The position numbers and the translations under genes are program-made. A stretch of DNA of 64,000 nt from Macrostomum lignano (taxonomy: Eukaryota): the NCBI GenBank assembly GCA_002269645.1, contig NIVC01001816.1, forward strand, positions 170,302 to 234,301. The letters are read 5' to 3'. Positions 15,495 through 36,271 of the stretch are shown here, in pieces; position 1 is the stretch's first letter; each line of letters starts with the position of its first letter. The notes under the pieces were generated by a model. It did not search any database, was not told the origin of the DNA, and saw only the letters and a program-made list of their open reading frames with translations.

Positions 15495-18400
15495 TCACAC
15501 TGCAGTCATGGCCAGGCCTGTGGCCTCCCCAGCCTCCTCGGCCTGCACCATGGTGCACCTGGCGCCACTGACCGCCCGCGCAAGCAGGTCCGCCTGGCCG
15601 CGAAGCACGCGGACGTTCCAAGCGAAACTGTCGGCAATTTTGGCCACCTTGCGCGGCTTATAGCCGGCCGATGAGCACATGGGTGCCAAATCGTCGTAGA
15701 ACTGCATGCAGGCGGCCTCGCAGTCTTGCAGTCGGGTGTGCATGCCCGGCCCGAGCTGCATCAGCTTCTTGCTCTCCGTAACCAGCTGCAATTGTTTTGG
15801 AGAAAATGAAATTAGTACAAGGTTTTAATATGTCACAATACAAATTATACATGCAATATTCGTATCTTGCCTACTTTTAAGTAGTGCAGTTTGAATTTTT
15901 ACACAAATTAAATTACACAGTAAATATTCCCATTTTGACTACTTAAAAGTAGTGCAGTTTGAATTTTTACACATTATATTTCGCCATCCCTCTGCTTACT
16001 TATTAGTAGTTCACTAAGAATTTGATGCTATTGCGTCAAACCAACTCAAATAAACACACCGACCTGCTCAAACGCGACTAGAGATTTTTTCAACGGTTCA
16101 GGCAGCGGCACCAGCGCTTCCAGACAGGGGCAGCTGGCCTTGCAGATCATTCGGAGACCGACAGCCTGCGGGCCTGAAGTGGCTGTTGAGTCTGAGCCAG
16201 CAGCAGCAGAAGCCCCAGATGAGGCGGCAGCGGCGCAGCTGCTGGCTCTGGCGGCCATGACCCTGACGCACTGCTTCACATTGGCGATGTGCGACAGGCC
16301 GCAGGCGTCCTGCAGCCCGGCCAGCGCCCTGTCGAATCCCTCGCGCAGTCCGGCCGCCTCGCGCAGTGTCGGCAGAGCCGCTTTAAACGCGTCGTCGATG
16401 TCGCGAAATCCGGTCGGCCGGAGTCGCGGATAGCCGCCGCCGGACCCGATGGACTCGACTCGCTCGCCGCTGTCGCCGCCTCCGCCGTCGCTGCCACCGC
16501 TGCTGGTGCGCGCTTTTAAATTCGGTTCCAAAGAGGAGCCGACGTTGAAATTTGTTGAATTTGAAGATTTCTTGTTCGAGGAGGCGAAGCTTCGTTTGCC
16601 AAGACGGCCGCCGCCGTGCCGGTTCGTCACGGCCACGTGCAGGAACAGGTGCGCCTCCGGCAGCGGCTCGCCGTCGCTGTCTAGCAGGCGGACGTGTCGA
16701 TAGCCTGACAACGATTAAAAAAGCTGTAATTTAGGTTGCAATTTGCTTTGATTGCTACTGACCTAATTTTCAGTACGATTTTCAGGATTTTATTTGAAAT
16801 TTATTGAAAATATTCATCTGAAGAAGAAAATTACAAAATAAATTGTAAAACTTTTTCGTTTCAGCAGGATAGATTAGCAATCCATTCTGATAGGATAGAT
16901 TAGCAATCCATTCTGATAGGATAGATTAGCAATCCATTCTGATAGGATAGACTAGCAATCCATTCTGATAGGATAGATTAGCAATCCATTCTGATAGGAT
17001 AGATTAGCAATCCATTCTGATAGGATAGACTAGCAATCCATTCTGATAGGATAGATTAGCAATCCATTCTGATAGGATAGATTAGCAATCCATTCTGATA
17101 GGATAGATTAGCAATCCATTCTGATAGAATAGATTAGCAATCCATTCTGATAGGATAGATTAGCAATCCATTCTGATAGACTAGACTAGCAATCCATTCT
17201 GATAGAATAGATTAGCAATCCATTCTGATAGGATAGATTAGCAATCCATTCTGATAGAATAGATTAGCAATCCATTCTGATAGGATAGATTAGCAATCCA
17301 TTCTGATAGGATAGATTAGCAATCCATTCTGATAGGATAGATTAGCAATCCATTCTGATAGGATAGATTAGCAATCCATTCTGATAGGATAGATTAGCAA
17401 TCCATTCTGATAGGATAGACTAGCAATCCATTCTGATAGGATAGATTAGCAATCCATTCTGAAAGGATAGATTAGCAATCCATTCTGATAGGATAGATTA
17501 GCAATCCATTCTGATAGGATAGATTAGCAATCCATTCTGATAGAATAGATTAGCAATCCATTCTGATAGGATAGATTAGCAATCCATTCTGATAGGATAG
17601 ATTAGCAATCCATTCTGAAAGGATAGATTAGCAATCCATTCGGATAGGATAGATTAGCAATCCATTCTGAAAGGATAGATTAGCAATCCATTCGGATAGG
17701 ATAGACTAGCAATCCATTCTGATAGGATAGATTAGCAATCCATTCTGATAGGATAGATTAGCAATCCATTCTGAAAGGATAGATTAGCAATCCATTCTGA
17801 TAGGCTAGATTAGCCATCCATTCTGAAAGGATAGATTAGCAATCCATTCTGAAAGGATAGATTAGCAATCCATTCTGAAAGGATAGATTAGCAATCCATT
17901 CTGAAAGGATAGATTAGCAATCCATTCTGATAGGATAGATTAGCAATCCATTCTGATAGGATAGATTAGCAATCCATTCTGATAGAATAGATTAGCAATC
18001 CATTCTGATAGGATAGATTAGCAATCCATTCTGATAGGATAGATTAGCAATCCATTCTGAAAGGATAGATTAGCAATCCATTCTGATAAGGATAGATTAG
18101 CAATCCATTCTGATAGACTAGACTAGCAATCCATTCTGATTGGATAGATTAGCCATCCATTCTGATAGGCTAGATTATCAATCCATTCTGAAAGTGTTTT
18201 GAAAGTGCCAATTTCTTTAAGTAAAGTCGATCTGAGCAAGGAGAGCGAAATCCATTAAAGCTTTTCTAATTCAGTAATTGCAACAATGTCGAGTGCCCAC
18301 TTGGCTTCAGTCTTCAGCCACTCGGCTTACAGGACCCGCCTATTAATAGTAAGACACTTGACTAACGAGATTGATTAATTATAACCATTACAACTGAATC

Positions 18401-18725: not shown

Positions 18726-18758
<33 letters not shown>

Positions 18759-18765
18759 GGCACTA

Positions 18766-18814
<49 letters not shown>

Positions 18815-18850
18815 CTACAACAGACAGACAGACAGACAGACAGAGACTAC

Positions 18851-18909
<59 letters not shown>

Positions 18910-18917
18910 CGACAAAA

Positions 18918-18962
<45 letters not shown>

Positions 18963-18973
18963 CTAATACAGAC

Positions 18974-19008
<35 letters not shown>

Positions 19009-19097
19009 CTAAGACAGACAGACAGACAGACAGACAGACGGACAGACAGACAGACACTAAGACAGACAGACAGACAGACAGACGGACAGACACTAAT

Positions 19098-19173
<76 letters not shown>

Positions 19174-22100
19174 CAATACGATACAACACAGCAAGCATAG
19201 CTCAATCCAGGTCATTAATTCCAATTCCAATTTGCCAAGCTGTGTCCAACACTTGCGTGCGCGTGACTTGAAAGCTGAGCAGGGAGAGAGAGTGACGGAC
19301 TGCGGCAGACAGCAATCCAACCCAAGCAGCGCCCGTGCTGCATGCATTGATCAGCTGTTGAAACCACAGCACAGATTTGCTACGCATGCATTGCACTCGC
19401 CCCAAACATTCATATATTCGTAGAATCTCACCTGAGACTGTCATCTACAGGATGTACATGTAATCTCAACTGAGACTGTCATCTACAGGGACAAAATCTC
19501 ACATGAGATTGTCATGTACAGGTATTGAATTTCACATGAGACTGCCATCTAGAGGAATAGAATCTCACCTGAGACTGCCATTTACAGGGACAGAATCTCA
19601 CCTGAGACTGTCATCTACAGAGATAGAATCTCACCAGAGCCTATCATGTACAGGTATAGAATCTCACCTGAGACTATTGTCTAGTTCTCAGTAATCAAAC
19701 CCAGGTACTTTACGATAAAACAGGCGTACTAACCGCAACCGACTCTGCTTAACTTTCGCCCGCCCCACTCACCAGTCTGGATGCAGTCGAACGGAATCGT
19801 GAACTGGCCAATAAAGTCGTCACCGATTGCGTCATCGTCCAGCACCACGAGCCGCAGCAGGGCCAGCTCAGGCAGACTTACCCGGAACTCAAAGCACTCA
19901 TCGAATACCGGATTATAGCCGTTGCCATGCACCGTTTTCGTCCGCTCTTCAGAACAGTCAGCGGGCAGGCCGAACACTTCCACAACAACGCAGGGGTCGG
20001 TGACGTCGCCCTTAGCAACGGAGCCGCGTGGCTTCGGCAGCTGCGAGCCGCTGATGACGCGAATATGGAGGCTGTGCGGCGCCAAGTCCGAGCCGCCTCC
20101 GCCGCGCTGGGCGAGGAAGGCGAAAGTCTGGCGCATAGCGCCCGGCTTCAGCACGAAGCCGCAGGAGCCGTTCTTAGAAAACTGGCCTCGGTTTAAATCG
20201 GTCATGAGGCCGGGAGTCTGATGGTTGAGGCAGACCAGCTGACAGCCGCAGCTCCACATGTCCTGAGGGTTGTAGTTGCTGGAGTCCACCCGGATGGCGT
20301 TGGGCTGCACCTGCACCAGGCAGCGCCGGCTGTACTCCACCAGGCCGTCCATGTCCGACTGGGCCAGACGGAATGCGGCCGACTCGCTGATTGACCAAAC
20401 CTGCTGATGGAGCAGCTGGTGCTGCTGCTGGTGATCAGGCTGACGACGGGAGGCCGCCTGCGCCGAGTCGGATTCTGGGAATGAGGACAGGAGTAATTTT
20501 TGTTGGATTTTCCGAGCTCTGCAATTTGGATTTTCTTGGGGTTCCCCCGGGTTGGATTTCCTTTTGGCCTCCCGAGGTGGATTTCTTTGGGGTTCCCTGA
20601 GGTGGATTTCCTTGGGGGTTTCCCGAGGTGGATTTCCTTGAGGTTTCCCGAGGTGGATTTCCTTGGGGGTTTCCCGAGGTGGATTTCCTTGAGGTTTCCC
20701 GAGGTGGATTTTCTTGGGGGTTTCCCGAGGTGGATTTCCTTGAGGTTTCCCGAGGTGGATTTCCTTGGGGGTTTCCCGAAGTGGATTTCCTTGGGGTTTC
20801 GTAGGCGGACTTTATTGAGATTTTCCTACGTGGATTTTCTTGGGGTTTCACCCGGGGGTGGATTTCCATGGGGTTTTAGAGATTTCTTAGAAAATTATGA
20901 AATTTCCTGAGGATTTTCCAAGATTTATTAATGACTTTTGGGATTTTCCAAGACTTCCATGGAACTGAAAAGGACTTTTCCCAGGATCTAGTTGAGAAAA
21001 AAATTCTTTTTTCAGAACTTTTCAACTCACTATAAAAATGGAAGCAGCAGTCGTCCAAATCCGCGAACCGCTCGGAGCCCAGAGCTGCCAGATCCGACAG
21101 CTCCTGGCTCAGCTTGATCCGCCTGCCGCACTGCTGCTGCTGCTGAGGCGGCGGCGGCGGCTGCTGCTGCTGCTGCTGCTGCTGCAGGGACTGGTGTGAC
21201 TGATTTCCAGCCTTTTTAAACGCCTTGGGACTTCGATCGCGCTGAATATCCACATTGTCGTCCTCTTCGCTGACGTAGCCGAAGGCGACTGCGCTTTGCT
21301 GCACGGTGGCCACCTGCCGTTCGCAGCCAGCCGAAGCGCCACCTTCTGGCGGAGGCGGCAGCTTCTTGCACTTCACCAGGATGCGTCGGCGAAGTCGAGA
21401 CGGCGTCAACAGCCGAGGATCCGACAGCAGTTGAACGTCCGACTCGCTGGCAGAGCCGGGGTCCAGCAGCCAGTCGCCAAGGGTGGAACGAATGAGCTGC
21501 ACCATGCGGCACTGCTGGGCCAGGCTGCAGTGGTTCTCGATGCTCAGGATTAGCGGCATGCTGCGGGAGGGTTGAGGTGGCGCGTGCCAGACTCGTTGCA
21601 TCTTGAGGATCTTGAGGAATTCCCCTTCTCGGGGATTCCCATCTTGAGGGATTTCCCCTCCATAGAGATTCCTGATCTTGAAGGATTTCCCATCGTGAAG
21701 GATTTCCCATTAAGATGGATTTGCATCCTGGGGGATTTCCCATCTTTATAGATTTAAAATCTTGAGGGATTTCCCATCTTTAGGGATTTCCGATCTTGAG
21801 GGATTTCCCATCTTTAGGGATTTCCCATCTTGAGGGATTTCCGATCTTGAGGGATTTCAAATTTTGAGGGATTTCCCATCTTGAGGGATTTCGCATCCTG
21901 AGGGATTTCCCATCTTGAGGGATTTCGCATCCTGAGGGATTTCCCATCTTGAGGGATTTCGCATCCTGAGGGGTTTCCCATCTTGAGGGATTTCCCATCT
22001 TTAGGGATTTCCCATCTTGAGGGATTTCCGATCTTGAGGGATTTCCCATCTTGAGGGATTTCCCATCTTTAGGGATTTCCCATCTTGAGGGATTTCCGAT

Positions 22101-25100
22101 CTTGAGGGATTTCAAATTTTGAGGGATTTCCCATCTTGAGGGATTTCGCATCCTGAGGGGTTTCCCATCTTGAGGGATTTCCCATCTTGAGGGATTTCAA
22201 ATTTTGAGGGATTTTCCATCTTGAGGGATTTCCCATCTTGAGGGATTTCCCATCTTGAGGGATTTCCCATCTTGAGGGATTTCCCATCTTGAGGGATTTC
22301 CCATCTTGAGAGATTTCCACTCCAGAGGGATTTTCCATCGTAAATGATTTCCCATTTGAGGATCGTCAGGAATTCCCCATTTTGAGGATTTCTTTAACTT
22401 AAGGATTTCATATTTTAAGGGATTGCCCATCCTAAGGGATTGCACTATTTTGAGTTCCGTTTTCCTATGGAATTTTTACATTTTACATAATTGTTACATG
22501 AGGGATTTCCCCATCATAAGAGAAATTTCTGCATCCTGACGGATTGCCATTCTGGGATATTTTTTCATCATGAGAGATTTACCAATGCGTTTTACGAATA
22601 CTTCTTTTTAGAGCAATAAAAAAATAATTTTAAAATATTGGCAATAGATTTTTCGGCATCTCTCAAGGCACCCTGCCGCTAATTACCCCGTAGCGCATGC
22701 AGGAGCTCGTCTCTTCATCTACCTTAACGACAGGACTTCAATTAAATTAATTAGACCCAGTTAGTGTCCTGTCAGCAGGTGCAATTAACATAATTATAAT
22801 TTTTCAGGATAAAATCCTGAGAAATCAAATCGGCTTAAAGAAAGATAATTAATTAGCTTCATCAAATGTATTCAGTTTCATTTGTGCTGATTGCAGTTCT
22901 CAGAATTTGTTCGATTTCGAAGATAAAAAGCTTAAGTCGTTCCTAGAGACTTCCTAGCTGTTTCTAAAATCCCAAATTCTGGTCCCATCCCTACAGAAAT
23001 CCCACACCCTGACCTCAACTCCGTGAGACATCCCACACCCTGACCACACCCCAATAGAAAATCTAATATTTGATCCCATCTCAATAAAAATCCCACACTC
23101 TGATCCCATAACCAATAGAAATCCTACAACCCGATCCCATACCCAATAGAAATCCCACACCCCGATCCCACCTCCAATAGAAATCCCACACTCTGATTCC
23201 ACCTCCAATAGAAATCCCACACTCTGATTCCACCTCCAATAGAAATCCCACACTCTGATTCCACCTCCAATAGAAATCCCACACTCTGATTCCACCTCCA
23301 ATAGAAATCCCACACTCTGATCCCATACCCAATAGAAATCCCACACTCTGATCCCATACCCAATAGAAATCCCACACTCTGATCCCACCTCCATTAGAAA
23401 TCGCACACTCTGATCCCACCTCCAATAGAATTCCCACACTCTGATCCCATACCCAATAGAATTCCCACACTCTGATCCCATACCCAATAGAAATCCCACA
23501 CCCGATCCCATACCCAATAGAAATCCCACACTTTGATCCCATCCAAAAATCCCACACTTTGATCCCATACCCCAGAGCACTCACTCGGTCTTGTAGAAGG
23601 CGAACTGCCTCACGGTATCCAGGACATCCCGCAGGCCAATCTTGCTGGTGAGGGTGTGGCCGTGGTATATGATCGGCTCATCATTGGGGCCGTTCCACAC
23701 TTCGACTGGAATCAAATCATTAATGAGGCTGATTGTAAATCTAACAAAATTAAGTTTTTGATTTAATATACTGACTAGAAACACAAGCAAGATAACAATC
23801 TACCAACTCACGCTCAATGTAACGAACTTGCGACTTCAACGCTTTCTCGTAGCCTTCAACGCTGGACTTCCCTTTTAATTGGTCCTCAAGCAGGTAGCTG
23901 CATTTCAAGGTTAGGATAAAATCTCGTTTGGTGGGCAAAAAACTCCCTCCCCCCGGCTAAAGTGAAACCAATCAGGATTTCTACATACGTGTTATGCGAC
24001 GAGTTAATAAAGTAGTGCGTTAGCGGCTGCTCCATGTCCTGGCACACTGCCAGGTGCTCAGGGTCGAAAATATCGCAGAATTCCGATTGAAGAAAGGCGG
24101 TGAATCCTGGATCAGGGTTTTGGAGGGATAACAAAATTTATAGTTGTCATGTTGAGCCATTTTGGATATGGGATATAGGATTCGGGATATGGGTTATAGG
24201 ATTCGGGATATAAGATATAGGATAAGGGATATGGTATTCATGAAATTCGGGATTTGGGATTTGAGATTCGGGATTTAATATTTGGGATTTGGAATTTGAG
24301 ATTTGAGATTCGGGATTAGAGATTTAGGATTTGGGATTCGAGATTTGAGATTTGGGATTTGAGATTCAGGATTTGAGATTCAGGATTTAAGACTTGAGAT
24401 TTGGGATTTGGGATTCGGGATTTGGGATTCGGGATTTGGGATTCAAGATTTGAGATTTGGGATTTGGGATTCGGGATTTGGGATTTGGGATTCGGGATTT
24501 GGGATTCGAGATTTGAGATTTGGGATTCGGGATTCGGGATTGAGGATTTAGGATTTGGAATCCTGGCTTTGGAATTTAGGATTCGGGGCTTATTATTTGA
24601 GGTTTTCAACGCCACTAACGTACGTGGTATTGGAAATGTCACATACTGTACAGGATTAAGTGCTAGGACAAACCATCAGGGATCTTTTACATGTACTGGT
24701 TTACTCAAAATCCCATTAAACGTAGACCCACCGTCAATGCCCAGCTGCCCTTTAGCCCGACCCTCTGTAGACGGCTCGAACTGGTTAATAATTTCCGAGC
24801 ACTTCTCTTTGCTAACTTTCGAATTCTGAAATAAAGACACGAGCTCGAGTTAAGAACTGTCGATCATACAAAGATCAATAAAAGTTATGAGCACCGTACC
24901 CCCTGTTCGGCTTCGAGAAACATGAGCAGATCTTCTGTAGACAAATAGTCTCCATCTGATGAGTATCTGCGCATTGGTGAAATTAGTCAAGTTAAGGTGC
25001 GACTCAAAAGGCAATGCAATCAATGCGGTGATTAAACTTTGGTCAGAACAATCTTTACTGAAGTATCTGATCTGGGGTGTCCGAGGGATCTGGGGTGTCC

Positions 25101-28085
25101 GGGAGATCTGGGGTGTCTGAGGGATCTGGGGTGTCCGAGGGATCTGGGGTGTCCGAGGGATCTGGGGTGTCCGAGGGATCTGGGGTGTCCGAGGGATCTG
25201 GGGTGTCCGAGGGATCTGGGGTGTCCGAGGGATCTGTGTGTCTGAGAGATCTGGGGTGTCCGAGAGATCTGGGGTGTCCGAGGGATCTGGGGTGTCCGAG
25301 GGATCTGGTATGTCTGAGGGATCTGGGGTGTCCGAGGGATCTGTGTGTCTGAGGGATCTGGGGTGTCAGAGATCCAAACAGGTCCATTAGACAGGCCACT
25401 CCAAACTCACAAATAGTACAAGCCCCAGGACAGCGCCCATTTCCCTCCAAGTTCTTGCCGGGGGGAAATCAGGCGGGCAGGCGAGAGCCCAAAGAAGAAA
25501 AAAACTGGAGCATCTTCTTCAAGACGACAGGACATGCTCAGGCATGCAATAACCGTGTCGCTGAACTGAAAAAATGACTGATTTGGACTGGGGGGAGAGG
25601 GCGTGCTGCTCGCGAGCCTCTGTCTCTCCCTTCGCCACTCCTTTCTGCTGCTCCACGTTTTCTTCAGAAATTTTAAGGCGCAGGATTTTTCTAGGAAAGC
25701 AATTAGTTATCATACACTGGGGGCTGGACTGATTTGGAATAAATGCGGAGGAGTAGTCGCTAACTGGAGATTGATGAAGGCTAATTGGTTAAATTTGAAA
25801 CAAGAGGAGAGAGATTAGATGAGATGAGACAGGATGAGCAAAGAAGAGATGAGACAGGATGAGATAAGACAGGATGAGACAGGATGAGACAGGATGAGAC
25901 AGGATGAGACAGGATGAGACAGGATGAGATGAGACAGTGGGACAGGATGAGACGAGACAGGATGGGACAGGATGAGATGAGACAGGATAAGACAGGATGA
26001 GATTAGACAAGAGGAGATGAGACAGGATGAGACAGGATTTAGCTTCAATCTGACTTCCCAGTCCTGATTTTGGCTATCTAAAAATTTGCAAAAAGTACGA
26101 AAATCGAATGGAAATAATTAAGAATTTAAGTGGAACTCGAGCCAACCGAAAGTCAATTCTCCAAGACCCATTTCGCCCCAGAGATCTGGCACGCCTGACA
26201 TTTGACTTACCTGACAAGCAGGAAGTAAACCTCCGGCCGCGTTGAAATCTCCTTAAACAGGTTAACAAACTCTGAGCTACTCAAACGACCGCGGGAAGAG
26301 ATTGCGTTAGCGATGTCCACCTCCTGAATTTGTGGCGAATAGGAAGAAATTTTGATGGTGGGCTGAATAGGATAAAAATCACCAGTGACAAGGCTGAATG
26401 AAATGGGATCTTATTGGGATAAAATTCCCCTAGGACTAGAATAATGCAATGGGATCTTATTGGGATAAAAATCCCCAGTGACTAGGCTGAATGCAATGGG
26501 ATCTTATTGGGATAAAATTCCCCTGGGACTAGAATAATGCAATGGGATCTTATTGGGATAAAAATCCCCAGTGACTAGGCTGAATGCAATGGGATCTTAT
26601 TGGGATAAAATTCCCCTAGGACTAGAATAATGCAATGGGATCTTATTGGGATAAAATTCCCCTGGGACTAGAATAATGCAATGGGATCTTATTGGGATAA
26701 AATTCCCCTGGGACTAGAATAATGCAATGGGATCTTATTGGGATAAAATTCCCCTGGGACTAGAATAATGCAATGGGATCTTATTGGGATAAAATTCCCC
26801 TGGGACTAGAATAATGCAATGGGATCTTATTGGGATAAAATTCCCTGGGACTAGAATAATGCAATGGGATCTTATTGGGATAAAACCCCCATGAACTAGG
26901 CTGAATGCAATGGGATCTTATTGGGATAAAATTCCCCTGGGACTAGAATAATGCAATGGGATCTTATTGGGATAAAATTCCCCTGGGACTAGAATAATGC
27001 AATGGGATCTTATTGGGATAAAAACCCCCATGAACTAGGCTGAATGCAATGGGATCTTATTGGGATAAAATTCCCCTGGGACTAAAATAATGCAATGGGA
27101 TCTTATTGGGATAAAAATCCCATGGAATATGATGAATGCAATAAGATCTTATTGGGATAAAAATCCCATGGAATATGATGAATGCAATGGGATCTTATTG
27201 GGATAAAAATCCCATGGAATATGCTGAATGCAATGGGATCTTATTGGGATAAAAATCCCATGGAATATGCTGAATGCAATGGGATCTTATTGGGATAAAA
27301 ATCCCATGGAATATGCTGAATGCAATGGGATCTTATTGGGATAAAAATCCCATGGAATATGCTGAATGCAATGGGATCTTATTGGGATAAAAATCCCATG
27401 GAATATGCTGAATGCAATGGGATCTTATTGGGATAAAAATCCCATGGAATATGCTGAATGCAATGGGATCTTATTGGGATAAAAATCCCATGGAATATGC
27501 TGAATGCAATGGGATCTTATTGGGATAAAAATCCCATGGAATATGCTGAATGCAATGGGATCTTATTGGGATAAAAATCCCATGGAATATGATGAATGCA
27601 ATGGGATCTTATTGAGATAAAAATCCCAAGGAAAAGGAAGCAATGATGCAAAATGAAAAGAACCGTTACCCTCACCTTCAACTTCTTTTTAATCCTGGAG
27701 GTGTTGACGCCGCTGTTGAGTTTCTTCATCAGCTGGATGACGTCCTGCTCATCGAGAAATCCGTCTTCGTCTAGTGAAGCGGCTGAGAACACTTCTTCAA
27801 GCCATCTAGCAATGTTATTGGTAAACTAATTTTTATGTCTACTGTCAATATGACTACCATATTTGGTAAGTGATGAGTGCGGACTGCATCTTGGCAAATA
27901 CGGACAAAGTTGACTCACCTGTCCCGCATGAGTTGCCGTTTCTCGATTGTATCACTTGCTAAAATAAAAGTACAAATAAACCGGGTTGGCCTGTTTTAGT
28001 GACCGACTTGCTGCGTATTCTAATTTATTAATGACTAACTGACAAACAAACAGACACTAGGATGGACACTGACAGGCACTAAAAC

Positions 28086-28124
<39 letters not shown>

Positions 28125-28139
28125 CCCACACAGACACTA

Positions 28140-28236
<97 letters not shown>

Positions 28237-28237
28237 C

Positions 28238-28268
<31 letters not shown>

Positions 28269-28283
28269 CACAGACAGACAGAA

Positions 28284-28332
<49 letters not shown>

Positions 28333-31300
28333 CCCACACAGACACTAAGACACACACAGTAAAACGCGGTCACGCACACAGCTGCCCAGGCCGGCCATTG
28401 ATGAGGCAGGTGAGGCCGGTGACCCACACGTTAGCGTCGTCAAGGGACACGGCGACAAGGTCCATGGACAGGAAGTCCTCGCCGTAGATGACGGTGAAAG
28501 CGCAGTCTGCCGGGTAGGCGGCGGCAACTTCGCTGTCCTTCAGGATGGCCGACGTGCGGCCGCGGCGAACCTCCTTGAGCTGGTCGATTGGCACTGGAAA
28601 GGAGGGAAAGAACACAAAAGGTGAGATCTATATATACTCATATATTAGAAATCAAAAGTACATTCCATACACCTCTAACACACCCAACATTTTGTTTTAA
28701 TTAACTAACTCCATTCAATAATCTTTGCAATGATATATGAATCTATAAAATAATAAGCAAATATTAGCGAAAAATCAGCGAAGAGCAATGATTTATTACT
28801 TTCTACACGCTAATACACCAAGGGTAGAGTAAAAATAAATTATAGACTTCTTCAGACGGAGTGAGAGACTTAAGCGGGGCTCGTGAGCTAGGGGAGGCCA
28901 TAGAAAGACAAACATTAAACTGGGAAGCGAGTGGACGGAGTCAAGGACACCCTGAACTAAAGTCTGGGAGTGCCAACTGTTCCCCATGACCTCTTCGAGT
29001 TTCGAGCTTGTGAAGATTCGAGCTTGTGAATATTCGAGCTTGTGAAGATTCGAGCTTGTGAAGATTCGAGCTTGTGAAGATTCGAGCTTGTGAATATTCG
29101 AGCTTGTGAAGATTCGAGCTTGTGAAGATTCGAGCTTGTGAAGATTCGAGCTTGTGAAGATTCGAGCTTGTGAATATTCGAGCTTGTGAAGATTCGAGCT
29201 TGTGAAGATTCGAGCTTGTGAAGATTCGAGCTCGTGGATATTCGAGCTTATAAAATGCTTCCATCGGTATCCAAGGATTTTTAACTTATATCAAGTTTAT
29301 GCCACATGCACATAAGACAAATTTGCACTCCAGATTTTATTTTAGAGATGTCCTTGACCGAGTGCAAGCCAGTGCTAGCTCAGCCTCTCTACACGCTGAG
29401 CACTTCCGCGTGAGTGAGCTCAAATTGCCTACATCTTTTAGAGCCTCTTACCCTCTCTCCCGCCTGTCTCTCAGCTCTCTCGTGTCGGCGAGAGCATTCC
29501 AGCGCTACTTGATTTTAGTTTCTGCTTACATACTTGGGGCCGGCGGCCAGCACTGGCTTGCATTGTATCGAATTAATTTCTCATGGCTGCTGCCCACATA
29601 AATTGAAGTTGGCCAGACTGATAGAGCGCTGTGTACTTTAAAATGAACAATCAGCATGCTTCACTGCGTGACGGGAGACAAAATTCTCAATATGAGTAAT
29701 GTAGATGTTGTGATTGACAATATTCCCGATACTGTAAGCCCGAATTCCCATACTGTAAGCCCAGATCCCCATATTATAAGCCCAGATCCCATACTATAAG
29801 CCTGAATTCCCATACTGTAAGCCCAGATCCCCATACTATAAGCCCAGATCCCATACTATAAGCCCAGATCCCCATACTATAAGCCCAGATCCCATACTAT
29901 AAGCCTGAATTCCCATACTGTAAGCCTAGATCCCATACTGTAAGCCCGAATCCCCATACTCTAAGCCCAGATCCCGATACTGTAAGCCCAGATCCCATAC
30001 TATAAGCCCAGATCCCATACTGTAAGCCCGAATCCCCATACTCTAAGCGCAGATCCCCATACTGTAAGCCCAGATCCCATACTGTAAGCCCAGATCCCAT
30101 ACTATAAGACCAGATCCCCATACCGTAAGCCCAGATTCCCATACTGTAAGCCCAGATCCCATACTGTAAGCCCAGATCCCATACTATAAGACCAGATCCC
30201 CATACCGTAAGCCCAGATTCCCATACTGTAAGCCCAGATCCCCATACTGTAAGCCCAGATCCTCATACTGTAAGCCCAGATCCCCATACTGTAAGCCCGA
30301 ATCCCCATACTGTAAGCCCAGATCCCCATACTGTAAGCCCAGATCCCCATACTTTAAGCCAGCCCAGATCCCCATACTGTAAGCCCGAATCCCCATACTG
30401 TAAGCCCAGATCCCCATACTGTAAGCCCAGATCCCCATACTTTAAGCCAGCCCAGGTCCCCATACTGTAAGCCCAGATCCCACGACCTCTCCCGTACTCC
30501 TTCAGCCTTGCAGAAGCAGTGGCAGCCCATAATAATGGAGGCAATTCATTTGGCACTTGATTACGCCTCATCAATCCCGCCTTATTCCAATTCCAGCCCA
30601 GCATCCGCTTCAGGCATTCATAAATCATTGTGTCATTATCCATTTCCTGAGTAGATTTCTCACACTAGCGATATCAGATGTATTCTCGCTGTGGAAGATG
30701 TAGATGTCCATAATTACTCGTAGGCGTTACGCGGGAATTGCAGTGCAGAATCCTCCTTGTGTCAGTAGATCCCGCAGCAGTAGACAGATTATCGGATCAG
30801 AAGTTGACAACTTTTCTTACTTTGCTCTCGAGGGTTTATTTGCTCACTGGGGAGGCTTTTGGGAGGATCAATGCTCTAATTTATTGCCCTTACATTTCTC
30901 ACACTCTTATTACATCAGACATCTCAGTCTAAATCTATCAATAGATCTACTTCTGGATGTCCCTTTAGATGTCCTTTAGATGCTCTCCCTATATATCCCT
31001 TAGAGACCTCCCTATCAATACTCCTTCAGATGTTCTTCTAAGTCTCCCTCTAGATGTCCCTCTAGATTTTCCCCTAGATCTTCCCTTAGATTCCCTCTAG
31101 ATCTTCCCATATATCCCTCAAGATTTCCCTCTAGATCTTCCCCTAGATCTCCCTCAAGATGTCCCTCTAGATTGCCCCTAGATCTCCATCTAAACTACAC
31201 TCTAGATGTCTTTTAGATGACTCTCTAGCGTCACTCTAGATCACCCTGTAGATTTTCCTCTACAGTAGATGACCCTCTAGATGTCCCTCTAGATCACCCT

Positions 31301-34300
31301 CTAGATGCCCCTCTAGATGCCCTTCTAGATGTCCTTCTAGATGTCCCTCTAGATCGCCCCTAGATCTCCATCTAAACTACACTCTAGATGTCTTTTAGAT
31401 GACTCTCTAGCGTCACTCTAGATCACCCTGTAGATTTTCCTCTACAGTAGATGACCCTCTAGATGTCCCTCTAGATCACCCTCTAGATGCCCCTCTAGAT
31501 GCCCTTCTAGATGTCCTTCTAGATGTCCCTCTAGATCGCCCCTAGATCTCCATCTAAACTACACTCTAGATGTCTTTTGATGTCTCTCTAGCGTCCCTTT
31601 AGATCACCCTCTAGATGCCCCTCTAGATGCCCTTTTAGATGTCCTTCTAGATGTCCCTCTAGCTCTCTCCCTGGACAATTCAAATACTATACGATAGCAA
31701 ATTATAACATTTTTACTTTAATTTCCCGAATATAGAAACTGTCAAAAGAAGTGGCCATCTTTAGTCACAATGAAATCTAAAAGTACTAAAAATTCTTTTG
31801 AGCAGGCTCTCTGTGGAGCTTTGTGGAGCTCCCAGAGACACAAAAGCAAAGTTAAGAAGAGATTTGGCCCGATGGGGCGCGGGCTATTCTCATGCGAGCG
31901 CCAAGGTTGAATAAATACTCACGGTCTCTTTCTTCCTTTCGTGCCGGTGTTAACACAAAACTGATGATACAATATCAAGCTCAGCCTCTCTTTGAATTTC
32001 TATGCACACATTGAGTCTCTGCTTTCATATGCGCGACCGAGGTAGAAATTTTTTCATGTAGGAAGCTGGTATAGTGCAAAGCAATACAATGATGAGAGCG
32101 ATAGAATGGATTGCTAATCTAGCATATAACGGAAGGCAATAGAATGGATTGCCAATCTAGCATATCACGGATGCGAAGGAATAGAATGGATTGCTAATCT
32201 AGCATATCACGGATGCGAAGGAATAGAATGGATTGCTAATCTAGCATATCACGGATGCGAAGGAATAGAATGGATTGCTAATCTAGCATATCACGGATGC
32301 GAAGGAACAGAATAGATTGCTAATCTAGCGGCCGCTAGCCTATCACGGATGGGAGGAGCATTGCACAATTCTTAGTATATAGCATAAAGGATCTACCGTG
32401 CGTAAAATGTAGCACCAGAAATCAAGGCCCAGCTTCATCAAAGGAAGGCGAATCTAATTTCCGAAATGGCAAACAAGTACAGTCCCTTGCTAGCAGAGAC
32501 TGCAGCTGGAGGCCGTGACCCGAGCTAGAATAGTAATTGCAGCTGTAAAGGGCTAGATTAGTGGCTGGGGACAGGATCAATGGATAGGCAAAGGTTTTTT
32601 CGATCGCAGCAACCCATCTAATCCTTGCCAAACACTCAATCTATTTTATCTTGTCCTTGTAGTTCATGCAGAACGGACAGAGAATGGAAACTACGTTTAA
32701 CAATCACAGAATAACAGGAAGGCGCACTGGACTGATTGCAGCGTGTTGCTGCCCATCCATGCGTCTGTCTGCTGGACTGTGCCCAAATATTTTATAAGGC
32801 GCTTGTAGGAGTGGGTGTGCGAAGTGGGGTGGGTGTGCGGAGTGGGGTGGGTGTGTGGAGTGGGGTGGGTGTGTGGAGTGGGGTGGGTGTTCGGAGAGGG
32901 GTGAGGGTGCAGAGTGGGTGGGTGTTCGGAGTGGGGTGGGTGTGCGGAGTGGGTGGGTGTTCGGAGTGGGGTGGGTGTGCGGAGTGGGGTAGGTGTTCAG
33001 AGTGGGATGGGTGTGCGGAGTGGGGTGGGTGTTCGGAGAGGGGTGAGTGTGCGGAGTGGGGTGGGTGTGCGGAGTGGGGTGGGTGTGCGGAGTGGGATGG
33101 GTGTGCGCAGTGGGGTGGGTGTTCAGAGTGGGATGGGTGTGCGCAGTGGGGTGGGTGTTCGGAGAAGGGTGAGTGTGCAGAGTGGGATGGGTGTGCAGAG
33201 TGGGGCGGGTGTGAGATACTAGATGCTGCATTTAATGTACCCAAAAATGATTTAATTAAAAGAACTCACATTTCGCTTTCTGTCTCTTCTTAGAAGACGG
33301 ATGCCACCGAATTTCCATGGTCTCAGTGTCCAAAAAGAAGAAGCGTTTAAAGTGTCGACCGCTAGACCGAATCTTCAGCAATTCGGTGCCGTCGCGCATG
33401 TAGTTGACGCAATCGGGCGCTGGTTAATGGCATTAAGGAAAAGGGGCAGCACAGTAAAATACTCGTATTCTTTCGCAAAAAAGGCGACACACAGCGTCTT
33501 TTATGACCCGCGGTATACCGGCTAGTTTATGGTTTATAAGATTCTGGACACAGTTGTTAGCAATTAGGTAAAGCAAAATAAATGTACGAAGACAGGGTGC
33601 TGTGTCACATGCCCGGACGAAGGACTACAATGAAGGGATAGTGATAAAAGGATCGTGATGAAGGGATCATGATCAAGGGATTGTGATCAAGGGATAGTGA
33701 GTGACGAAGGGATAGTGATGAAGGGATAGTGATGAAGGGATAGTGATGAAGGGATAGTGATGAAGGGATAGTGATGAAGGGATAGTGATGAAGGGACCGT
33801 GATGAAGGGATTGTGATGAAGGGATAATGATGAATGAAGGGATTGTGATGAAGGGAGAGTGATGAAGGGATTGTGATGAAGACTTTATGATAAAGGGATT
33901 GTGATGAAGGGATAGTGTTGAGGGGATAGTGATGAAGGGATTGTGATGAAGGGATTGTGATGAAGGAAGAGTGATGAAGGGATTGTGATGAAGAATTAGT
34001 GATGAAGGGATAAGGCGCGGCGCTAATGCCTGAAGCAATATCTGGTCGATAATGCCCACATAAACCCCAATACAACATGCGCACATATAACTACTAAAAA
34101 CTCGGTTCAGCCTGTCAGACAAGAATGATAATCAAAGTCTTTCGGGATAGCCGCTGTCACAATATCCGCGAGTGGGAGGCGGCTAGCGTTTGATATATGC
34201 ATTAACATCGTGAGCCAACCGCCGTATCGCTATACTGCCTACATTATAATATCACAATACATTATCGATTAGCGGCAGAGCCTTCAAGCTGCAAATCTTC

Positions 34301-36271
34301 CGTCTCGGACGCGGCCCCCGCTATCCGCACTAAAAAATCATCATTTTTGTCCCCGGGCCAGCCAAGTCTATTTATTTAGCTGTCTGCCCTTCTATCCATC
34401 AATGTTTTAAAGTACTTTTGTGGGGATGAGCGAACTCGACTGCGTTATGTCAAGTTAACTCAGGACCATTTTTATGAGTAAAAAGTTTTTTCAGTGAGTG
34501 AGTGAGTTAGTGAATGAATGAGTAAATGAGTGAGTGAGTGAGTGAGTGAGTGAATGAATGAATGAGTGAGTGAGTAAGTGAATGAATGAGTGAGTGAATG
34601 TGAGAATGAGTGAGTAAATGAGTAAGTGAATGAGTGAATGAGTGAGTGAATGAGTGAGTCAGTGAGTGAGTGAGTGAGTGAGTGAGTGAGTGAGTGAGTG
34701 AGTGAGTGAGTGAGTGAATGAGTGAGTAAATGAGTAAGTGAATGAGTGAATGAGTGAGTAAATGAGTAAGTGAATGAGTGAATGAGTGAGTAAAGGAGTG
34801 AGTCAGTAAGTGAGTGAGTGAATGAATGAGTGAGTGAATGTGTGAATAAACTAGTGAGTAAGTGAGTGAATGAGTGAGTGAGTGAGTAAGTGAGTGAGTG
34901 AATGAGTGAGTAAATGAGTAAGTGAATGAGTGAATGAGTGAGTGAATGAGTGAGTCAGTGAGAATATGTAAATGAGTAATGGCGCAAGTAAAATGTAAGC
35001 TGTTAATTACATAAAAGTTTCCAAAAGCTGAACTCCAGCGAACAGATAAAAACGGGAATTTATTGAACTTTAGAGCCCACTTTGCTCGGTGGAGATCTTA
35101 TCTTAAAAATTTTCCTGAGAAAATCGCTCCAAAACGAGTTCGAGTTTCAAAAAGCTGTCACGCCCAAAACCCCCTCATCCACTTCTACCCCGTGTCCCAG
35201 ACTCCTTCCTCATCTCGCCAAGATGGGGATTTCCGCGCCAACGAACTTCCCGGTTGGCTGAGTCAATAAAACGCGCGCATATAAAAGTGCGGACGCCGCG
35301 GGAAGAAAGGCGAAGGCTAAAAATGGGAGGAAAAAAACGAAAGACTCTCCCGACCGGGCTGATCTTATCTACGGTTGCCATGCCATCCTTCCTGATATCT
35401 TTTCAGGGTCATCCATTCCGCAGAGTTTTTCTTTCAAGTCTTGAGTTCTTTTTTTCTTCAAAAAATTGACTTTGCTCAATTCCGTTAGCTTTGAGTCTCC
35501 CCTGTCAGGCCAAAAAACGATCGCTTATACTCGCAGCTGTCTACCCAGCAAGACTACTCAGATTACCTAATCTAGAAGAGCAGTTGTCTATCCAGCAAGA
35601 CTACTCAGATGACTTAATCTAGAAGAGTAGCTGTCTACCCAGCAAGACTACTCAGATGACCTAATCTAGAAGAGCAGTTGTCTACCCAGCAAGACTACTC
35701 AGATGATCTAATCTATAAGAGCAGCTGTCTACCCAGCAAGACTACTCAGATGCCTGATCTAGATGAGTAGCTGTCTACCCAGCAAGACTACTCAGATGCG
35801 TGATCTAGATGAGTAGCTGTCTACCCAGCAAGACTACTCAGATGACCTAATCTATAAGAGCAGCTGTCTACCCAGCAAGACTACTCAGATGACCTAATCT
35901 AATCTATAAGAGTAGCTGTCTACCCAGCAAGACTACTCAGATGACCTAATCTAGAAGAGTAGCTGTCTACCCGATAATAATCTACTCAAATAAGCAGAGA
36001 AAACTGGTCAAATATCGAAGCTCTACTCACCATCGATAACGCGAATTCCCTTGTCAAAGGACGATGAAAGAAATGACACAGATTTTTTCTGTATTGGCGT
36101 TGGAGATGAGACACTGCTGCCTCCGCTACCAGGGTCTTGACACTGCGACTTCAACAGGCCTTGAAGTTTGCCTGTACGAGCTTGAGCTATTGGAGTTGAT
36201 GATGATGTTGAAGCTGATGGAGTACCTAAAGCATCTGCCATGTCATTGCCATTGCCATTTGCATCCATCAT
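15495..36271 (-). CDS. PLCL1/2: Phospholipase C-like protein (PLCL1/PLCL2, PRIP type): PH, EF-hands, X, Y, C2 and PRIP C-terminal domain; 15 exons, ~1179 aa
   Basis: Exons (minus): 36271-36031, 33419-33270, 28593-28378, 27958-27919, 27805-27676, 26323-26211, 24966-24900, 24825-24732, 24106-23989, 23897-23812, 23705-23585, 21560-21031, 20474-19773, 16704-16064, 15785-15495. All are GT-AG and phase-consistent, total 3540 nt. Motifs: [82 protein letters not shown], and the PRIP-specific [16 protein letters not shown]. Confidence 0.95.
16866..18190. repeat. 26-bp minisatellite (GATAGGATAGATTAGCAATCCATTCT)n, ~50 copies
   Basis: Period 26, highly homogeneous; PLCL intron 13. Confidence 0.95.
18560..19175. 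repeat. (GACA)n array with GACACTAA variants
   Basis: Visible. Confidence 0.95.
19405..19680. repeat. ~30-bp degenerate minisatellite (AATCTCACCTGAGACTGTCATCTACAGG core)
   Basis: About 8 diverged units. Confidence 0.8.
20525..20880. repeat. 25/26-bp minisatellite (TTCCCGAGGTGGATTTCCTTG(G/A)GG(G)T)
   Basis: Alternating 26- and 25-bp units; PLCL intron 12. Confidence 0.85.
21600..22560. repeat. 17-bp minisatellite (GAGGGATTTCCCATCTT)n
   Basis: Visible; PLCL intron 11, degenerating towards both ends. Confidence 0.9.
22965..23570. repeat. 31-bp minisatellite (AATAGAAATCCCACACTCTGATTCCACCTCC)
   Basis: Period 31; PLCL intron 11, abutting the exon 11 donor. Confidence 0.9.
24155..24590. repeat. 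~7-bp GGGATT(T/C) simple repeat
   Basis: Visible; PLCL intron 8. Confidence 0.85.
25066..25372. repeat. 18-bp minisatellite (GAGGGATCTGGGGTGTCC)n
   Basis: Visible; PLCL intron 6. Confidence 0.9.
25808..26038. repeat. 10-bp repeat (GACAGGATGA)n
   Basis: Visible. Confidence 0.85.
26385..27625. repeat. 46-bp minisatellite with two variant blocks (shared core AATGCAATGGGATCTTATTGGGATAAAA)
   Basis: Period 46. The CCCTGGGACTAGAAT variant is at left and the CCCATGGAATATGCTG variant at right; fills PLCL intron 5. Confidence 0.95.
28085..28358. repeat. (GACA)n array with GACACTAA and GACACCCACACA variants
   Basis: Visible; PLCL intron 3. Confidence 0.95.
28998..29250. repeat. 16-bp minisatellite (TTCGAGCTTGTGAAGA)n
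   Basis: Visible. Confidence 0.9.
29725..30482. repeat. 20/21-bp minisatellite (ATACTGTAAGCCCAGATCCC(C))n
   Basis: Visible. Confidence 0.9.
31000..31665. repeat. Degenerate ~11-12-bp CTAGATGTCCCT repeat with an internal longer duplication
   Basis: Visible; block ...CTCCATCTAAACTACACTCTAGATG... recurs three times. Confidence 0.8.
32100..32350. repeat. 42-bp minisatellite (GGAATAGAATGGATTGCTAATCTAGCATATCACGGATGCGAA), ~6 copies
   Basis: Period 42 (32178, 32220, 32262). Confidence 0.9.
32808..33212. repeat. 18-bp G-rich minisatellite (GGGGTGGGTGTGCGGAGT)n
   Basis: Visible; G-tracts give G-quadruplex potential. Confidence 0.9.
33628..34012. repeat. 14-bp minisatellite (GGGATAGTGATGAA)n
   Basis: Visible. 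Confidence 0.9.
34493..34960. repeat. (GAGT/GAAT)n tetranucleotide array
   Basis: Visible. Confidence 0.9.
35536..35970. repeat. ~47-bp minisatellite (GCTGTCTACCCAGCAAGACTACTCAGATGACCTAATCTAGAAGAGTA)
   Basis: About 9 units, just inside PLCL intron 1. Confidence 0.9.

What the first reader, a model, noticed from the sequence alone, without database searches (positions are those of the whole stretch)
19773..24106. PRIP/PLCL-type PLC with the reverse of the vertebrate inactivation pattern: X-box catalytic residues kept, Y-box substrate residues lost
Seen after splicing: [47 protein letters not shown] and [17 protein letters not shown]. Knowledge (PLC-delta1 numbering): H311/H356 are catalytic; N312/E341/D343/E390 bind Ca2+; K438/K440/S522/R549 bind the phosphates; Y551 stacks on inositol. 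Vertebrate PRIPs are inactive through loss of H356 and E390 while keeping RIYP. Here H311, N312, E341, H356, E390, K438, K440 and S522 equivalents are intact, but D343 is E and SRIYP is VQVQP (R549Q, Y551Q). Inference: either an active enzyme with altered headgroup specificity (e.g. PI or non-inositol rather than PIP2), or an independent route to a pseudoenzyme.
Basis: partly seen in the sequence, partly recalled or inferred. Interest (0 to 1): 0.7.

Follow-up and report, generated by a model that had tools for sequence, protein, structure and literature searches.

The report
Flatworm PLC-like gene, substrate-binding residues lost
This is the already annotated but unstudied Macrostomum lignano copy of the PRIP/PLCL "phospholipase C-like" gene; it keeps the catalytic residues but has lost two residues that hold the lipid headgroup, one more of many independent ways this gene family has damaged its active site.

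Summary
Window 19773-24106 (minus strand) holds exons 9-13 of a 15-exon gene (36271-15495). Its spliced CDS translates exactly to GenBank PAA63756.1 of the flatworm Macrostomum lignano, a transcript-derived model. Aligned to rat PLC-delta1, H311, N312, E341, H356, E390, K438, K440 and S522 are kept. D343 is E, R549 is Q and Y551 is Q.

The protein is a PRIP/PLCL ortholog: PH, EF, X, Y and C2 domains, a PRIP-type C-terminal extension and an N-terminal KSVSF motif. Three subgenome copies carry the same motifs, with dN/dS 0.11-0.14, so the gene is functional.

The pattern is not the general protostome state. Mollusc, annelid, nemertean, brachiopod and echinoderm orthologs keep all 11 residues. 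It is not unique either: trematodes, ticks, a spider, a leech and amphioxus also lack R549 and/or Y551, always with further X-box damage. A monogenean keeps RVYP, so the Macrostomum loss is probably independent.

Most likely (about 0.6) this is a PRIP-like pseudoenzyme or scaffold that cannot hold PI(4,5)P2 in its X-Y pocket. A weak PLC with changed headgroup preference (about 0.2) is not excluded. It is a modest new variant of a known kind.

The parts
36031..36271 (-). Exon 1: start codon, low-complexity N-terminus, and KKSVSF (residues 62-67), a PP1-docking-type K-x-V-x-F motif
   Evidence: Exact mapping of P0281. Other PLCL orthologs carry RKKTVSF at the same place.
33270..33419 (-). Exon 2: first half of the PH domain ([14 protein letters not shown], equivalents of PLC-delta1 K30, K32 and R40)
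   Evidence: Pfam PH_12. Alignment to 1mai. Model matches 1mai with TM 0.85.
28378..28593 (-). Exon 3: second half of the PH domain
27919..27958 (-). Exon 4: 40-nt exon ([13 protein letters not shown]), missed in my first model
27676..27805 (-). Exon 5: EF-hand region
26211..26323 (-). Exon 6: EF-hand region
24900..24966 (-). Exon 7: EF-hand-like region
24732..24825 (-). Exon 8: EF-hand-like region
23989..24106 (-). Exon 9: start of the X box; SSHNT(Y) with H388/N389 (= H311/N312)
23812..23897 (-). Exon 10: YLLEDQL...RYIE with E418 (= E341)
23585..23705 (-). Exon 11: (L)EVWNGP...IIYHGHT with E420 (= D343E, GAA 23703-23701) and H433 (= H356)
21031..21560 (-). Exon 12: LSIENHCS (E467 = E390), ILVKCKKL (K522/K524 = K438/K440), and the Q/P-rich X-Y linker
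   Evidence: The linker has low pLDDT.
19773..20474 (-). Exon 13: Y box and C2 domain; S663 (= S522); LVQVQP with Q690 (CAG 20313-20311 = R549Q) and Q692 (CAG 20307-20305 = Y551Q)
   Evidence: Predicted strand 688-692.
16064..16704 (-). Exon 14: end of C2, a disordered Gly/Ser-rich stretch, and the start of the PRIP-type C-terminal helical extension
   Evidence: tblastn with Aplysia PLCL residues 694-846
15495..15785 (-). Exon 15: C-terminal helices with [15 protein letters not shown] (1137-1151) and the stop codon

Best explanation
The region is the catalytic-core part of the Macrostomum lignano ortholog of PRIP/PLCL (phospholipase C-related, 'PLC-like' protein). The gene is transcribed, intact and under purifying selection in all three subgenome copies.

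Its X-Y barrel keeps the general acid/base histidines, three of the four Ca2+ ligands (the fourth is D to E) and K438/K440/S522. It has replaced R549, which binds the 4-phosphate and gives the polyphosphoinositide preference, and Y551, which stacks on the inositol ring. Both are now glutamine.

Inferred consequence: the pocket can no longer hold the PI(4,5)P2/IP3 headgroup productively. The protein would then act like mammalian PRIP, as a non-catalytic scaffold. It would be targeted by its PH domain, whose IP3/PIP2-binding residues are kept. It would dock phosphatase through the N-terminal KSVSF motif and use the conserved C-terminal helical extension. Unlike mammalian PRIP, its X-Y domain should not sequester PI(4,5)P2.

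In evolutionary terms it is one more independent decay of the active site in a clade whose ancestor had a complete site.

Shown: gene structure, identity, residue states, copy conservation, selection, distribution among orthologs. Inferred: loss of substrate binding and catalysis, and the scaffold role.
For: Gene and identity:
- The 15-exon CDS is identical to PAA63756.1.
- That annotation is transcript-based.

Family:
- Pfam finds PH_12, EF-hand_like, PI-PLC-X, PI-PLC-Y and C2.
- The best named relatives are PLCL orthologs.
- The C-terminal extension and the FAWN[IV]RVL[KR]GQADL motif are shared with PLCL orthologs.
- PLCL and PLC-delta separate in 200/200 NJ bootstraps.

Residues:
- Alignment to 1djg, site table, census over 43 sequences.
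- The AlphaFold model (pLDDT 77, X and Y boxes about 85-97) superposes on 1djg_A with TM 0.92. The strand 688-692 carries Q690/Q692.

Residue roles: K438, K440, S522 and R549 bind the 4- and 5-phosphates and Y551 stacks on the ring (PMC12195575).

Selection: three copies have identical motifs, dN/dS 0.11-0.14, binomial p<=1.4e-8.

Relaxation: 11 of 76 otherwise invariant X/Y positions are changed, against 0-8 in intact members.

Recurrence in degenerate orthologs.

PH domain: the R40/R134 equivalent is kept. The mammalian PRIP X-Y domain binds PI(4,5)P2 (PMC6726632).
Against: - Every residue of the chemical step (H311, H356) and the other Ca2+ ligands are intact, as are K438, K440 and S522. 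In every other lineage that lost R549/Y551 the X box has also decayed, so their retention here could mean continued catalytic constraint.
- From my own memory of the literature (Wang et al. 1996 J Biol Chem; not retrievable here), loss of positive charge at 549 abolishes PIP2 hydrolysis by human PLC-delta1 but not PI hydrolysis.
- D343E is conservative.
- No activity, binding or expression-pattern data exist.
- 11/76 deviations is only slightly above the intact range.
- dN/dS over the whole gene says the protein is needed, not that the pocket is inactive.
Confidence: 0.6

Rival explanations
1. It is still an enzyme. A Ca2+-dependent PLC has lost its preference for polyphosphoinositides and cleaves PI, or another phosphodiester headgroup, using the intact His pair and Ca2+ site.
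For: - H311, N312, E341, H356, E390, K438, K440 and S522 equivalents are all retained.
- The fold is essentially that of PLC-delta1 (TM 0.92).
- The gene is under purifying selection.
- The nearest relatives by distance (nemertean, brachiopod, annelid, mollusc) have complete sites, so the ancestor was probably active.
- From my own knowledge, R549 substitutions in PLC-delta1 spare PI hydrolysis.
Against: - Y551, which stacks on the inositol ring of any phosphoinositide, is also lost, so PI binding should suffer too (role).
- Y to Q needs two nucleotide changes, so this is not a very recent accident.
- S548 is V and D343 is E as well.
- 11 of 76 invariant core positions are changed.
- In every other lineage, the same losses accompany obvious inactivation.
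Confidence: 0.22
2. The Y-box loss is not a Macrostomum event. It is the ancestral state of rhabditophoran flatworms, inherited by both Macrostomum and trematodes. This concerns evolutionary history only and is compatible with either functional reading.
For: - All six trematode orthologs lack R549 and Y551 and share RYIE[LIV]E (D343E).
- Schistosoma even reads L-[VI]-Q-I-C-P against Macrostomum L-V-Q-V-Q-P.
Against: - The monogenean Cichlidogyrus ortholog is clearly of the neodermatan type elsewhere, yet it keeps LMRVYPSPARTDSSN.
- Residue 549 varies among trematodes (Q, E, K), which points to drift after loss.
- A Macrostomum + trematode clade appears in only 44/200 NJ bootstraps, although long branches make this weak.
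Confidence: 0.25
3. Artefact or dead gene: an assembly error, a mis-splice, or a decaying pseudogene copy in a polyploid genome.
For: The older UniRef models P0001 and P0058 of the same gene are riddled with frameshifts. The genome is redundant.
Against: - The window gives an uninterrupted 1179-codon CDS with 14 GT-AG introns, identical to a transcript-derived GenBank protein.
- Two further loci in GCA_002269645.1 encode the same motifs in 15 exons.
- dN/dS is 0.11-0.14.
- The QVQ codons lie mid-exon.
Confidence: 0.02

Closest known systems
Mammalian PRIP-1/PLCL1 and PRIP-2/PLCL2 (phospholipase C-related catalytically inactive proteins)
   Same: - Orthologous family with the same PH-EF-X-Y-C2 architecture plus a C-terminal helical extension carrying the FxWN[IV]xVLKGQ motif.
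- N-terminal K-[ST]-V-S-F motif.
- PH-domain Arg equivalent to R40/R134.
   Different: - Vertebrates disable the chemistry (PLCL2 H356T; PLCL1 H356 and E390 replaced) but keep K438/K440/S522/R549/Y551. Their X-Y domain still binds PI(4,5)P2.
- M. lignano keeps H356 and E390 and loses R549/Y551 (plus D343E).
Rat PLC-delta1 (PDB 1djg, 1qas, 1mai), the active reference enzyme
   Same: E=3.7e-117; model TM 0.92 to 1djg_A; 8 of 11 active-site residues identical.
   Different: - D343E, R549Q, Y551Q.
- Hydrophobic-ridge W555 is I, and Y358/F360 are H/L, as in other PLCL orthologs.
- It has the PRIP-type N- and C-terminal extensions that PLC-delta lacks.
Trematode PLCL orthologs (Schistosoma mansoni A0A3Q0KTJ3, S. 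japonicum 'inactive phospholipase C-like protein 1', Paragonimus, Calicophoron, Dicrocoelium)
   Same: Same phylum. They share D343E (RYIE[LIV]E) and lack R549 and Y551.
   Different: - Trematodes have also lost N312 (K), H356 (R) and the NH of ENHC.
- They have changed 23-25 of 76 invariant core positions against 11 in M. lignano.
- They have long insertions.
- The monogenean relative keeps RVYP.
Lophotrochozoan and echinoderm PLCL orthologs with a complete site (e.g. Tubulanus, Lingula, Littorina, Crassostrea, Owenia, Strongylocentrotus)
   Same: Closest in sequence (48-51% identity over the whole protein). Same architecture and terminal motifs.
   Different: They keep all 11 PLC-delta1 active-site residues although NCBI names them 'inactive'. 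M. lignano does not.
Caenorhabditis elegans PLL-1 (NP_741067) and other nematode PLC-like proteins
   Same: PLCL-clade members with a damaged active site.
   Different: Damage is mainly in the X box (H311R, N312K, H356N, E390S in C. elegans). R549 is kept and Y551 is F or T.

Membership tests
PRIP/PLCL (PLC-like) family | PH - EF-hand - X - Y - C2 domain order of the PLC-delta type | tested here: met
   Pfam PH_12, EF-hand_like, PI-PLC-X (3e-52), PI-PLC-Y (1e-29) and C2. Model matches 1djg_A with TM 0.92 and 1mai with TM 0.85.
PRIP/PLCL (PLC-like) family | Closer to PLCL orthologs than to PLC-delta, zeta or other isozymes | tested here: met
   Top named hits are 'inactive phospholipase C-like protein 1/2' from many phyla; PLC-delta4 ranks lower. 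The PLCL/PLC-delta split is found in 200/200 NJ bootstraps.
PRIP/PLCL (PLC-like) family | C-terminal extension of about 280 residues after C2 with the conserved F-[AST]-W-N-x-R-[VIL]-L-x-G-Q motif | tested here: met
   Exons 14-15 align to PLCL C-termini. [15 protein letters not shown] matches FAWNIRVLKGQADLL in molluscs, nemertean and brachiopod. The extension is predicted helical with pLDDT 80-97.
PRIP/PLCL (PLC-like) family | N-terminal phosphatase-1 docking motif (K-[ST]-V-S-F) upstream of the PH domain | tested here: met
   KKSVSF is at residues 62-67 of P0281; orthologs carry RKKTVSF. Binding itself was not tested. That this motif docks PP1 in PRIP-1 is from my own knowledge.
PRIP/PLCL (PLC-like) family | PH-domain residues for Ins(1,4,5)P3/PI(4,5)P2 binding (R40 of PLC-delta1 = R134 of PRIP-1) | tested here: met
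   The alignment to 1mai puts K, R and R on K30, K32 and R40, and S and K on S55 and K57. The role of R134 is from PMC6726632.
PRIP/PLCL (PLC-like) family | No PLC activity | not testable with these tools
   Needs an enzyme assay.
PRIP/PLCL (PLC-like) family | Vertebrate-type inactivating substitutions (H356 replaced; E390 replaced in PLCL1) | tested here: not met
   H433 and E467 are retained. This is a feature of the vertebrate members, not of the whole orthologous clade.
Active eukaryotic PI-PLC (EC 3.1.4.11, PLC-delta type) | Catalytic histidines H311 and H356 | tested here: met
   H388 and H433
Active eukaryotic PI-PLC (EC 3.1.4.11, PLC-delta type) | Ca2+ ligands N312, E341, D343, E390 | tested here: inconclusive
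   N389, E418 and E467 are kept; D343 is E420. Whether Glu can replace Asp in the Ca2+ site cannot be told from sequence.
Active eukaryotic PI-PLC (EC 3.1.4.11, PLC-delta type) | Phosphate ligands K438, K440, S522, R549 | tested here: not met
   K522, K524 and S663 are kept, but R549 is Q690.
Active eukaryotic PI-PLC (EC 3.1.4.11, PLC-delta type) | Y551 stacking on the inositol ring | tested here: not met
   Q692. Y is present in 32 and F in 2 of 43 aligned PLCL/PLC-delta sequences.
Active eukaryotic PI-PLC (EC 3.1.4.11, PLC-delta type) | Hydrolysis of phosphoinositides | not testable with these tools
   Needs an enzyme assay.

The most novel reading that the evidence does not exclude
The M. 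lignano PLCL protein is a working Ca2+-dependent phospholipase C. Its headgroup pocket has been remodelled (R549Q, Y551Q, S548V, D343E), so it no longer prefers PI(4,5)P2 and cleaves PI or a non-canonical substrate. That would make the PLCL clade a mixture of active enzymes, re-specified enzymes and pseudoenzymes, rather than an 'inactive' family.
Probability: 0.2. Interest if true: 0.55.

Novelty: new variant of a known kind. Interest (0 to 1): 0.3.

Why it matters
PRIP/PLCL proteins are treated as catalytically dead by definition, on the basis of the two mammalian genes. The comparison made here suggests three things:
- The ancestral PLCL had a complete active site, which many invertebrate orthologs still have.
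- The site has been damaged independently, and in different places, in vertebrates, arthropods, nematodes, leech, amphioxus and flatworms.
- M. lignano is the cleanest case where only the headgroup-binding half is hit.

If confirmed at the bench, it would give a natural separation-of-function allele, with chemistry residues present and PIP2 binding absent. That could be used to ask whether the X-Y pocket's PIP2 binding matters for PRIP function, in an animal with RNAi and transgenesis. Practically, it also shows that the database names are unreliable in both directions: 'inactive PLC-like protein' for intact-site orthologs, and 'phosphoinositide phospholipase C' for this one.

Tried and rejected
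1. A 127-residue Y-box query to the search for homologous proteins found only 4 word-sharing candidates and no hits, which wasted one of three searches.
I used exon 13 alone.
3. An exact look-up of the frameshifted UniRef model P0001 found no contig.
4. My first gene model missed exon 1 and the 40-nt exon 4 and chose a wrong donor for exon 3. I corrected this with P0281.
5. After I thought the R549/Y551 loss was ancestral to flatworms. The monogenean sequence with RVYP and the weak NJ support (44/200) made me downgrade that to a rival.
6. The first NJ script timed out. I reran it with my own numpy NJ code.
7. The primary mutagenesis papers (Ellis et al. 1998 and Wang et al. 1996, J Biol Chem) are not held. 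What I say about them is from memory and is marked so.
8. Literature searches for PRIP in invertebrates or flatworms found nothing specific.
9. The AlphaFold tool gives no coordinates, so the pocket itself could not be inspected or docked. Only fold conservation and local confidence were obtained.

Full report
WHAT IS THERE

The finding's coordinates (19773-24106) are five exons of a gene on the minus strand. I first rebuilt the gene by hand from stop-to-stop frames and GT/AG sites. I then corrected the model with a database protein that turned out to be identical.

The final model has 15 exons, from 36271 (ATG) to 15495 (stop), and every intron is GT-AG. The 3540-nt CDS translates residue for residue to GenBank PAA63756.1 (P0281), 'hypothetical protein BOX15_Mlig023826g1' of Macrostomum lignano. 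So the window is M. lignano genome.

The GenBank annotation of that assembly (Mlig_3_7) was made from a genome-guided RNA-seq and de novo transcriptome assembly (PMC5730564). The splice junctions therefore have transcript support. Nearly every intron is filled with minisatellite arrays, as expected for a genome with 15% simple and tandem repeats.

THE OBSERVATION

Pfam finds PH_12, EF-hand_like, PI-PLC-X, PI-PLC-Y and C2. The best solved relative is rat PLC-delta1 (1djg, E=3.7e-117). Its printed alignment fixes the residue correspondence:

| PLC-delta1 residue | M. lignano (P0281) | State |
|---|---|---|
| H311 / N312 | H388 / N389 | kept |
| E341 | E418 | kept |
| D343 | E420 | changed to E |
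| H356 | H433 | kept |
| E390 | E467 | kept |
| K438 / K440 | K522 / K524 | kept |
| S522 | S663 | kept |
| R549 | Q690 | changed to Q |
| Y551 | Q692 | changed to Q |

The E420 codon (GAA, 23703-23701) lies entirely in exon 11. The two CAG codons (20313-20311 and 20307-20305) lie in the middle of the 702-nt exon 13. None of the three changes depends on a splice choice. No alternative Y-box exon exists in the window.

An AlphaFold model built on 43 orthologs (mean pLDDT 77, X and Y boxes mostly 85-97) superposes on 1djg_A with TM 0.92 and on the PLC-delta1 PH domain with TM 0.85. It puts L688-Q692 in a beta-strand, as in PLC-delta1.

IS THE GENE ALIVE?

The Mlig_3_7 assembly holds three copies: PAA63756.1, PAA88402.1 and PAA77340.1. 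This fits the three subgenomes S, L1 and L2 described for this neopolyploid (PMC10733133). All three have 15 exons and identical active-site motifs.

Pairwise dS is 0.027-0.034 and dN/dS is 0.11-0.14. The deficit of non-synonymous changes is significant (binomial p <= 1.4e-8). Artefact and pseudogene are excluded.

WHAT FAMILY

The named relatives are 'inactive phospholipase C-like protein 1/2' from molluscs to vertebrates; PLC-delta4 ranks lower. The protein has the features that set PLCL apart from PLC-delta:
- an extension of about 280 residues after C2, ending in [15 protein letters not shown] (FAWNIRVLKGQADLL in molluscs, nemertean and brachiopod);
- an N-terminal KKSVSF, corresponding to RKKTVSF of the orthologs.

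The PH domain keeps the equivalents of K30, K32 (as R), R40, S55 and K57 of PLC-delta1. R40 equals R134 of PRIP-1, and mutating it abolishes IP3/PIP2 binding (PMC6726632). In an NJ analysis, PLCL and PLC-delta separate in 200/200 replicates.

HOW GENERAL IS THE PATTERN?

I tabulated the 11 sites in 39 PLCL and PLC-delta sequences, in 43 aligned sequences, and in the 150 best cluster representatives found with exon 13.

| Lineage | State of the 11 sites |
|---|---|
| Molluscs (Littorina, Crassostrea), the annelid Owenia, the nemertean Tubulanus, the brachiopod Lingula, echinoderms, a hemichordate | all 11 kept |
| Vertebrate PLCL2 | H356T |
| Vertebrate PLCL1 | H356 and E390 replaced |
| Arthropods | E341K |
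| Nematodes, a tardigrade, the leech Helobdella, amphioxus | several different losses |

It is not singular either. R549 and/or Y551 are also missing in several other lineages:
- all six trematode orthologs (Schistosoma L[VI]QICP, Paragonimus FEVIP, Calicophoron LKVLP, and an unnamed trematode-like Logan protein with LEVRP), plus the partial Dicrocoelium model (EIV), which was not in the table;
- ticks (HVS) and a spider (HVF);
- the leech (LVF) and amphioxus (EVH);
- Y551 alone in coelacanth PLCL2.

In all of those the X box is damaged too. M. lignano is the only sequence in the sample where the Y-box pair plus D343E is the whole damage.

SHARED WITH OTHER FLATWORMS OR INDEPENDENT?

Trematodes share RYIE[LIV]E (D343E) and the missing R549/Y551 with M. 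lignano, which at first suggested an ancestral flatworm state. Two results speak against that:
- The monogenean Cichlidogyrus ortholog is a partial model running from the Y box onward, and it is plainly of the neodermatan type. It reads LMRVYPSPARTDSSN.
- Residue 549 varies among trematodes (Q, E, K).

The simplest reading is that the Y-box losses of trematodes and of Macrostomum are independent. D343E may be older, because the X box of the monogenean is unknown. NJ does not recover a Macrostomum + trematode clade (44/200), but trematodes sit on very long branches. I keep common ancestry as a rival at 0.25.

Y to Q needs two nucleotide changes (TAY to CAR), so the state is not a very recent accident.

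MECHANISM

According to the literature at hand, K438, K440, S522 and R549 bind the 4- and 5-phosphates and give the preference for PI(4,5)P2. Y551 stacks on the inositol ring (PMC12195575; see also PMC11174929).

From memory, and not retrievable here:
- Alanine replacement of most of these residues lowers PLC-delta1 activity by orders of magnitude (Ellis et al. 1998).
- Loss of the positive charge at 549 abolishes PIP2 hydrolysis but not PI hydrolysis (Wang et al. 1996).

Mammalian PRIP has lost the chemistry but its X-Y domain still associates with PI(4,5)P2 (PMC6726632).

M. lignano shows the converse: the chemistry residues are present and the headgroup clamp is gone. A leave-one-out count over 76 X/Y positions invariant in ten intact enzymes gives these numbers of changes:

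| Group | Positions changed (of 76-84 compared in the leave-one-out sets) |
|---|---|
| M. lignano | 11 |
| Intact members | 0-8 |
| PLCL2 | 7 |
| PLCL1 | 13 |
| Trematodes | 23-25 |

This points to mild relaxation of the catalytic core.

I therefore favour (0.6) a PRIP-like non-catalytic protein. It would be recruited through its PH domain and act through its N-terminal phosphatase motif and C-terminal helical domain, with an X-Y pocket that no longer holds PI(4,5)P2. The alternative is a feeble or re-specified PLC (0.2), and only an assay can decide. The retention of all X-box residues is the main argument for that alternative.

COMPARISON AND NOVELTY

The gene is already in GenBank and UniProt, as 'hypothetical protein' and 'Phosphoinositide phospholipase C'. 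Those are automatic names without study. I found no paper on PLCL in flatworms or on invertebrate PLCL active sites.

It is a member of the PLCL clade by orthology and architecture. It does not show the vertebrate-type inactivating changes, and it fails two defining substrate-binding features of active PI-PLCs. I rate it a new variant of a known kind, of modest interest (0.3). The broader pattern may be the more useful result: intact sites in many 'inactive'-named invertebrate orthologs, and repeated independent decay.

LIMITS
- There are no enzyme or binding data.
- The flatworm sample is M. lignano, six trematodes and one partial monogenean.
- The phylogeny is NJ only.
- The structure tool returns no coordinates, so the pocket was not inspected.

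Noticed in passing
window 58587-58949, + strand: A single-exon ORF of 120 residues. It has a signal-peptide-like start (MTQPSGTVPVALLLLLALAIQLSAES) and a C-terminal run of dibasic-flanked units: KR-GMFRYG-KR-QMFRFG-KR-ALLG-KR-AYMFRYG-KR. This looks like an FMRFamide-like (MFRF/MFRY-amide) neuropeptide precursor. It has no Pfam hit.
   Followed up: partly
window 4443-6332, - strand: A degenerate LTR-retrotransposon pol region (Pfam RT_RNaseH_2, RT_RNaseH, Integrase_H2C2, weak rve_3), broken over several reading frames, in the GC-rich block at 4-6 kb.
   Followed up: partly
window about 53395-53530, + strand: An exon-like ORF segment encoding a LIM domain (Pfam LIM, E=3e-7). It is probably part of another gene, to which the Q-rich ORFs at 51.8-53.0 kb may also belong.
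   Followed up: no
window 16866-35972 (introns of the PLCL gene): Almost every intron carries long minisatellite arrays. Examples: 26-bp x 51 copies at 16866-18191, 46-bp x 27 at 26370-27632, 34/51-bp arrays at 21609-22361, and (ACAG)n at 18558-19173 and 28086-28344. These create long spurious ORFs in all frames.
   Followed up: partly
related proteins P0002, P0300, P0335, P0284, P0292, P0017, P0286 (not in the window): Mollusc, annelid, nemertean, brachiopod and echinoderm orthologs that NCBI names 'inactive phospholipase C-like protein 2' keep all 11 PLC-delta1 active-site residues. The word 'inactive' is probably carried over from the vertebrate genes, and these proteins may be active PLCs.
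   Followed up: partly
loci L001 (NIVC01000190.1) and L002 (NIVC01000750.1): Two further full-length copies of the same gene in the M. lignano assembly, 97% identical at synonymous sites. They differ mainly by indels in the poly-Q/poly-P linker and a Gly run, and fit the S/L1/L2 subgenome structure.
   Followed up: yes
P0281 residues 970-1172 (window exons 14-15): The PRIP-specific C-terminal extension is predicted with high confidence (pLDDT 80-97) as long helices plus a beta-hairpin. The whole-protein search returned no PDB match attributable to it; this region was not searched on its own.
   Followed up: no
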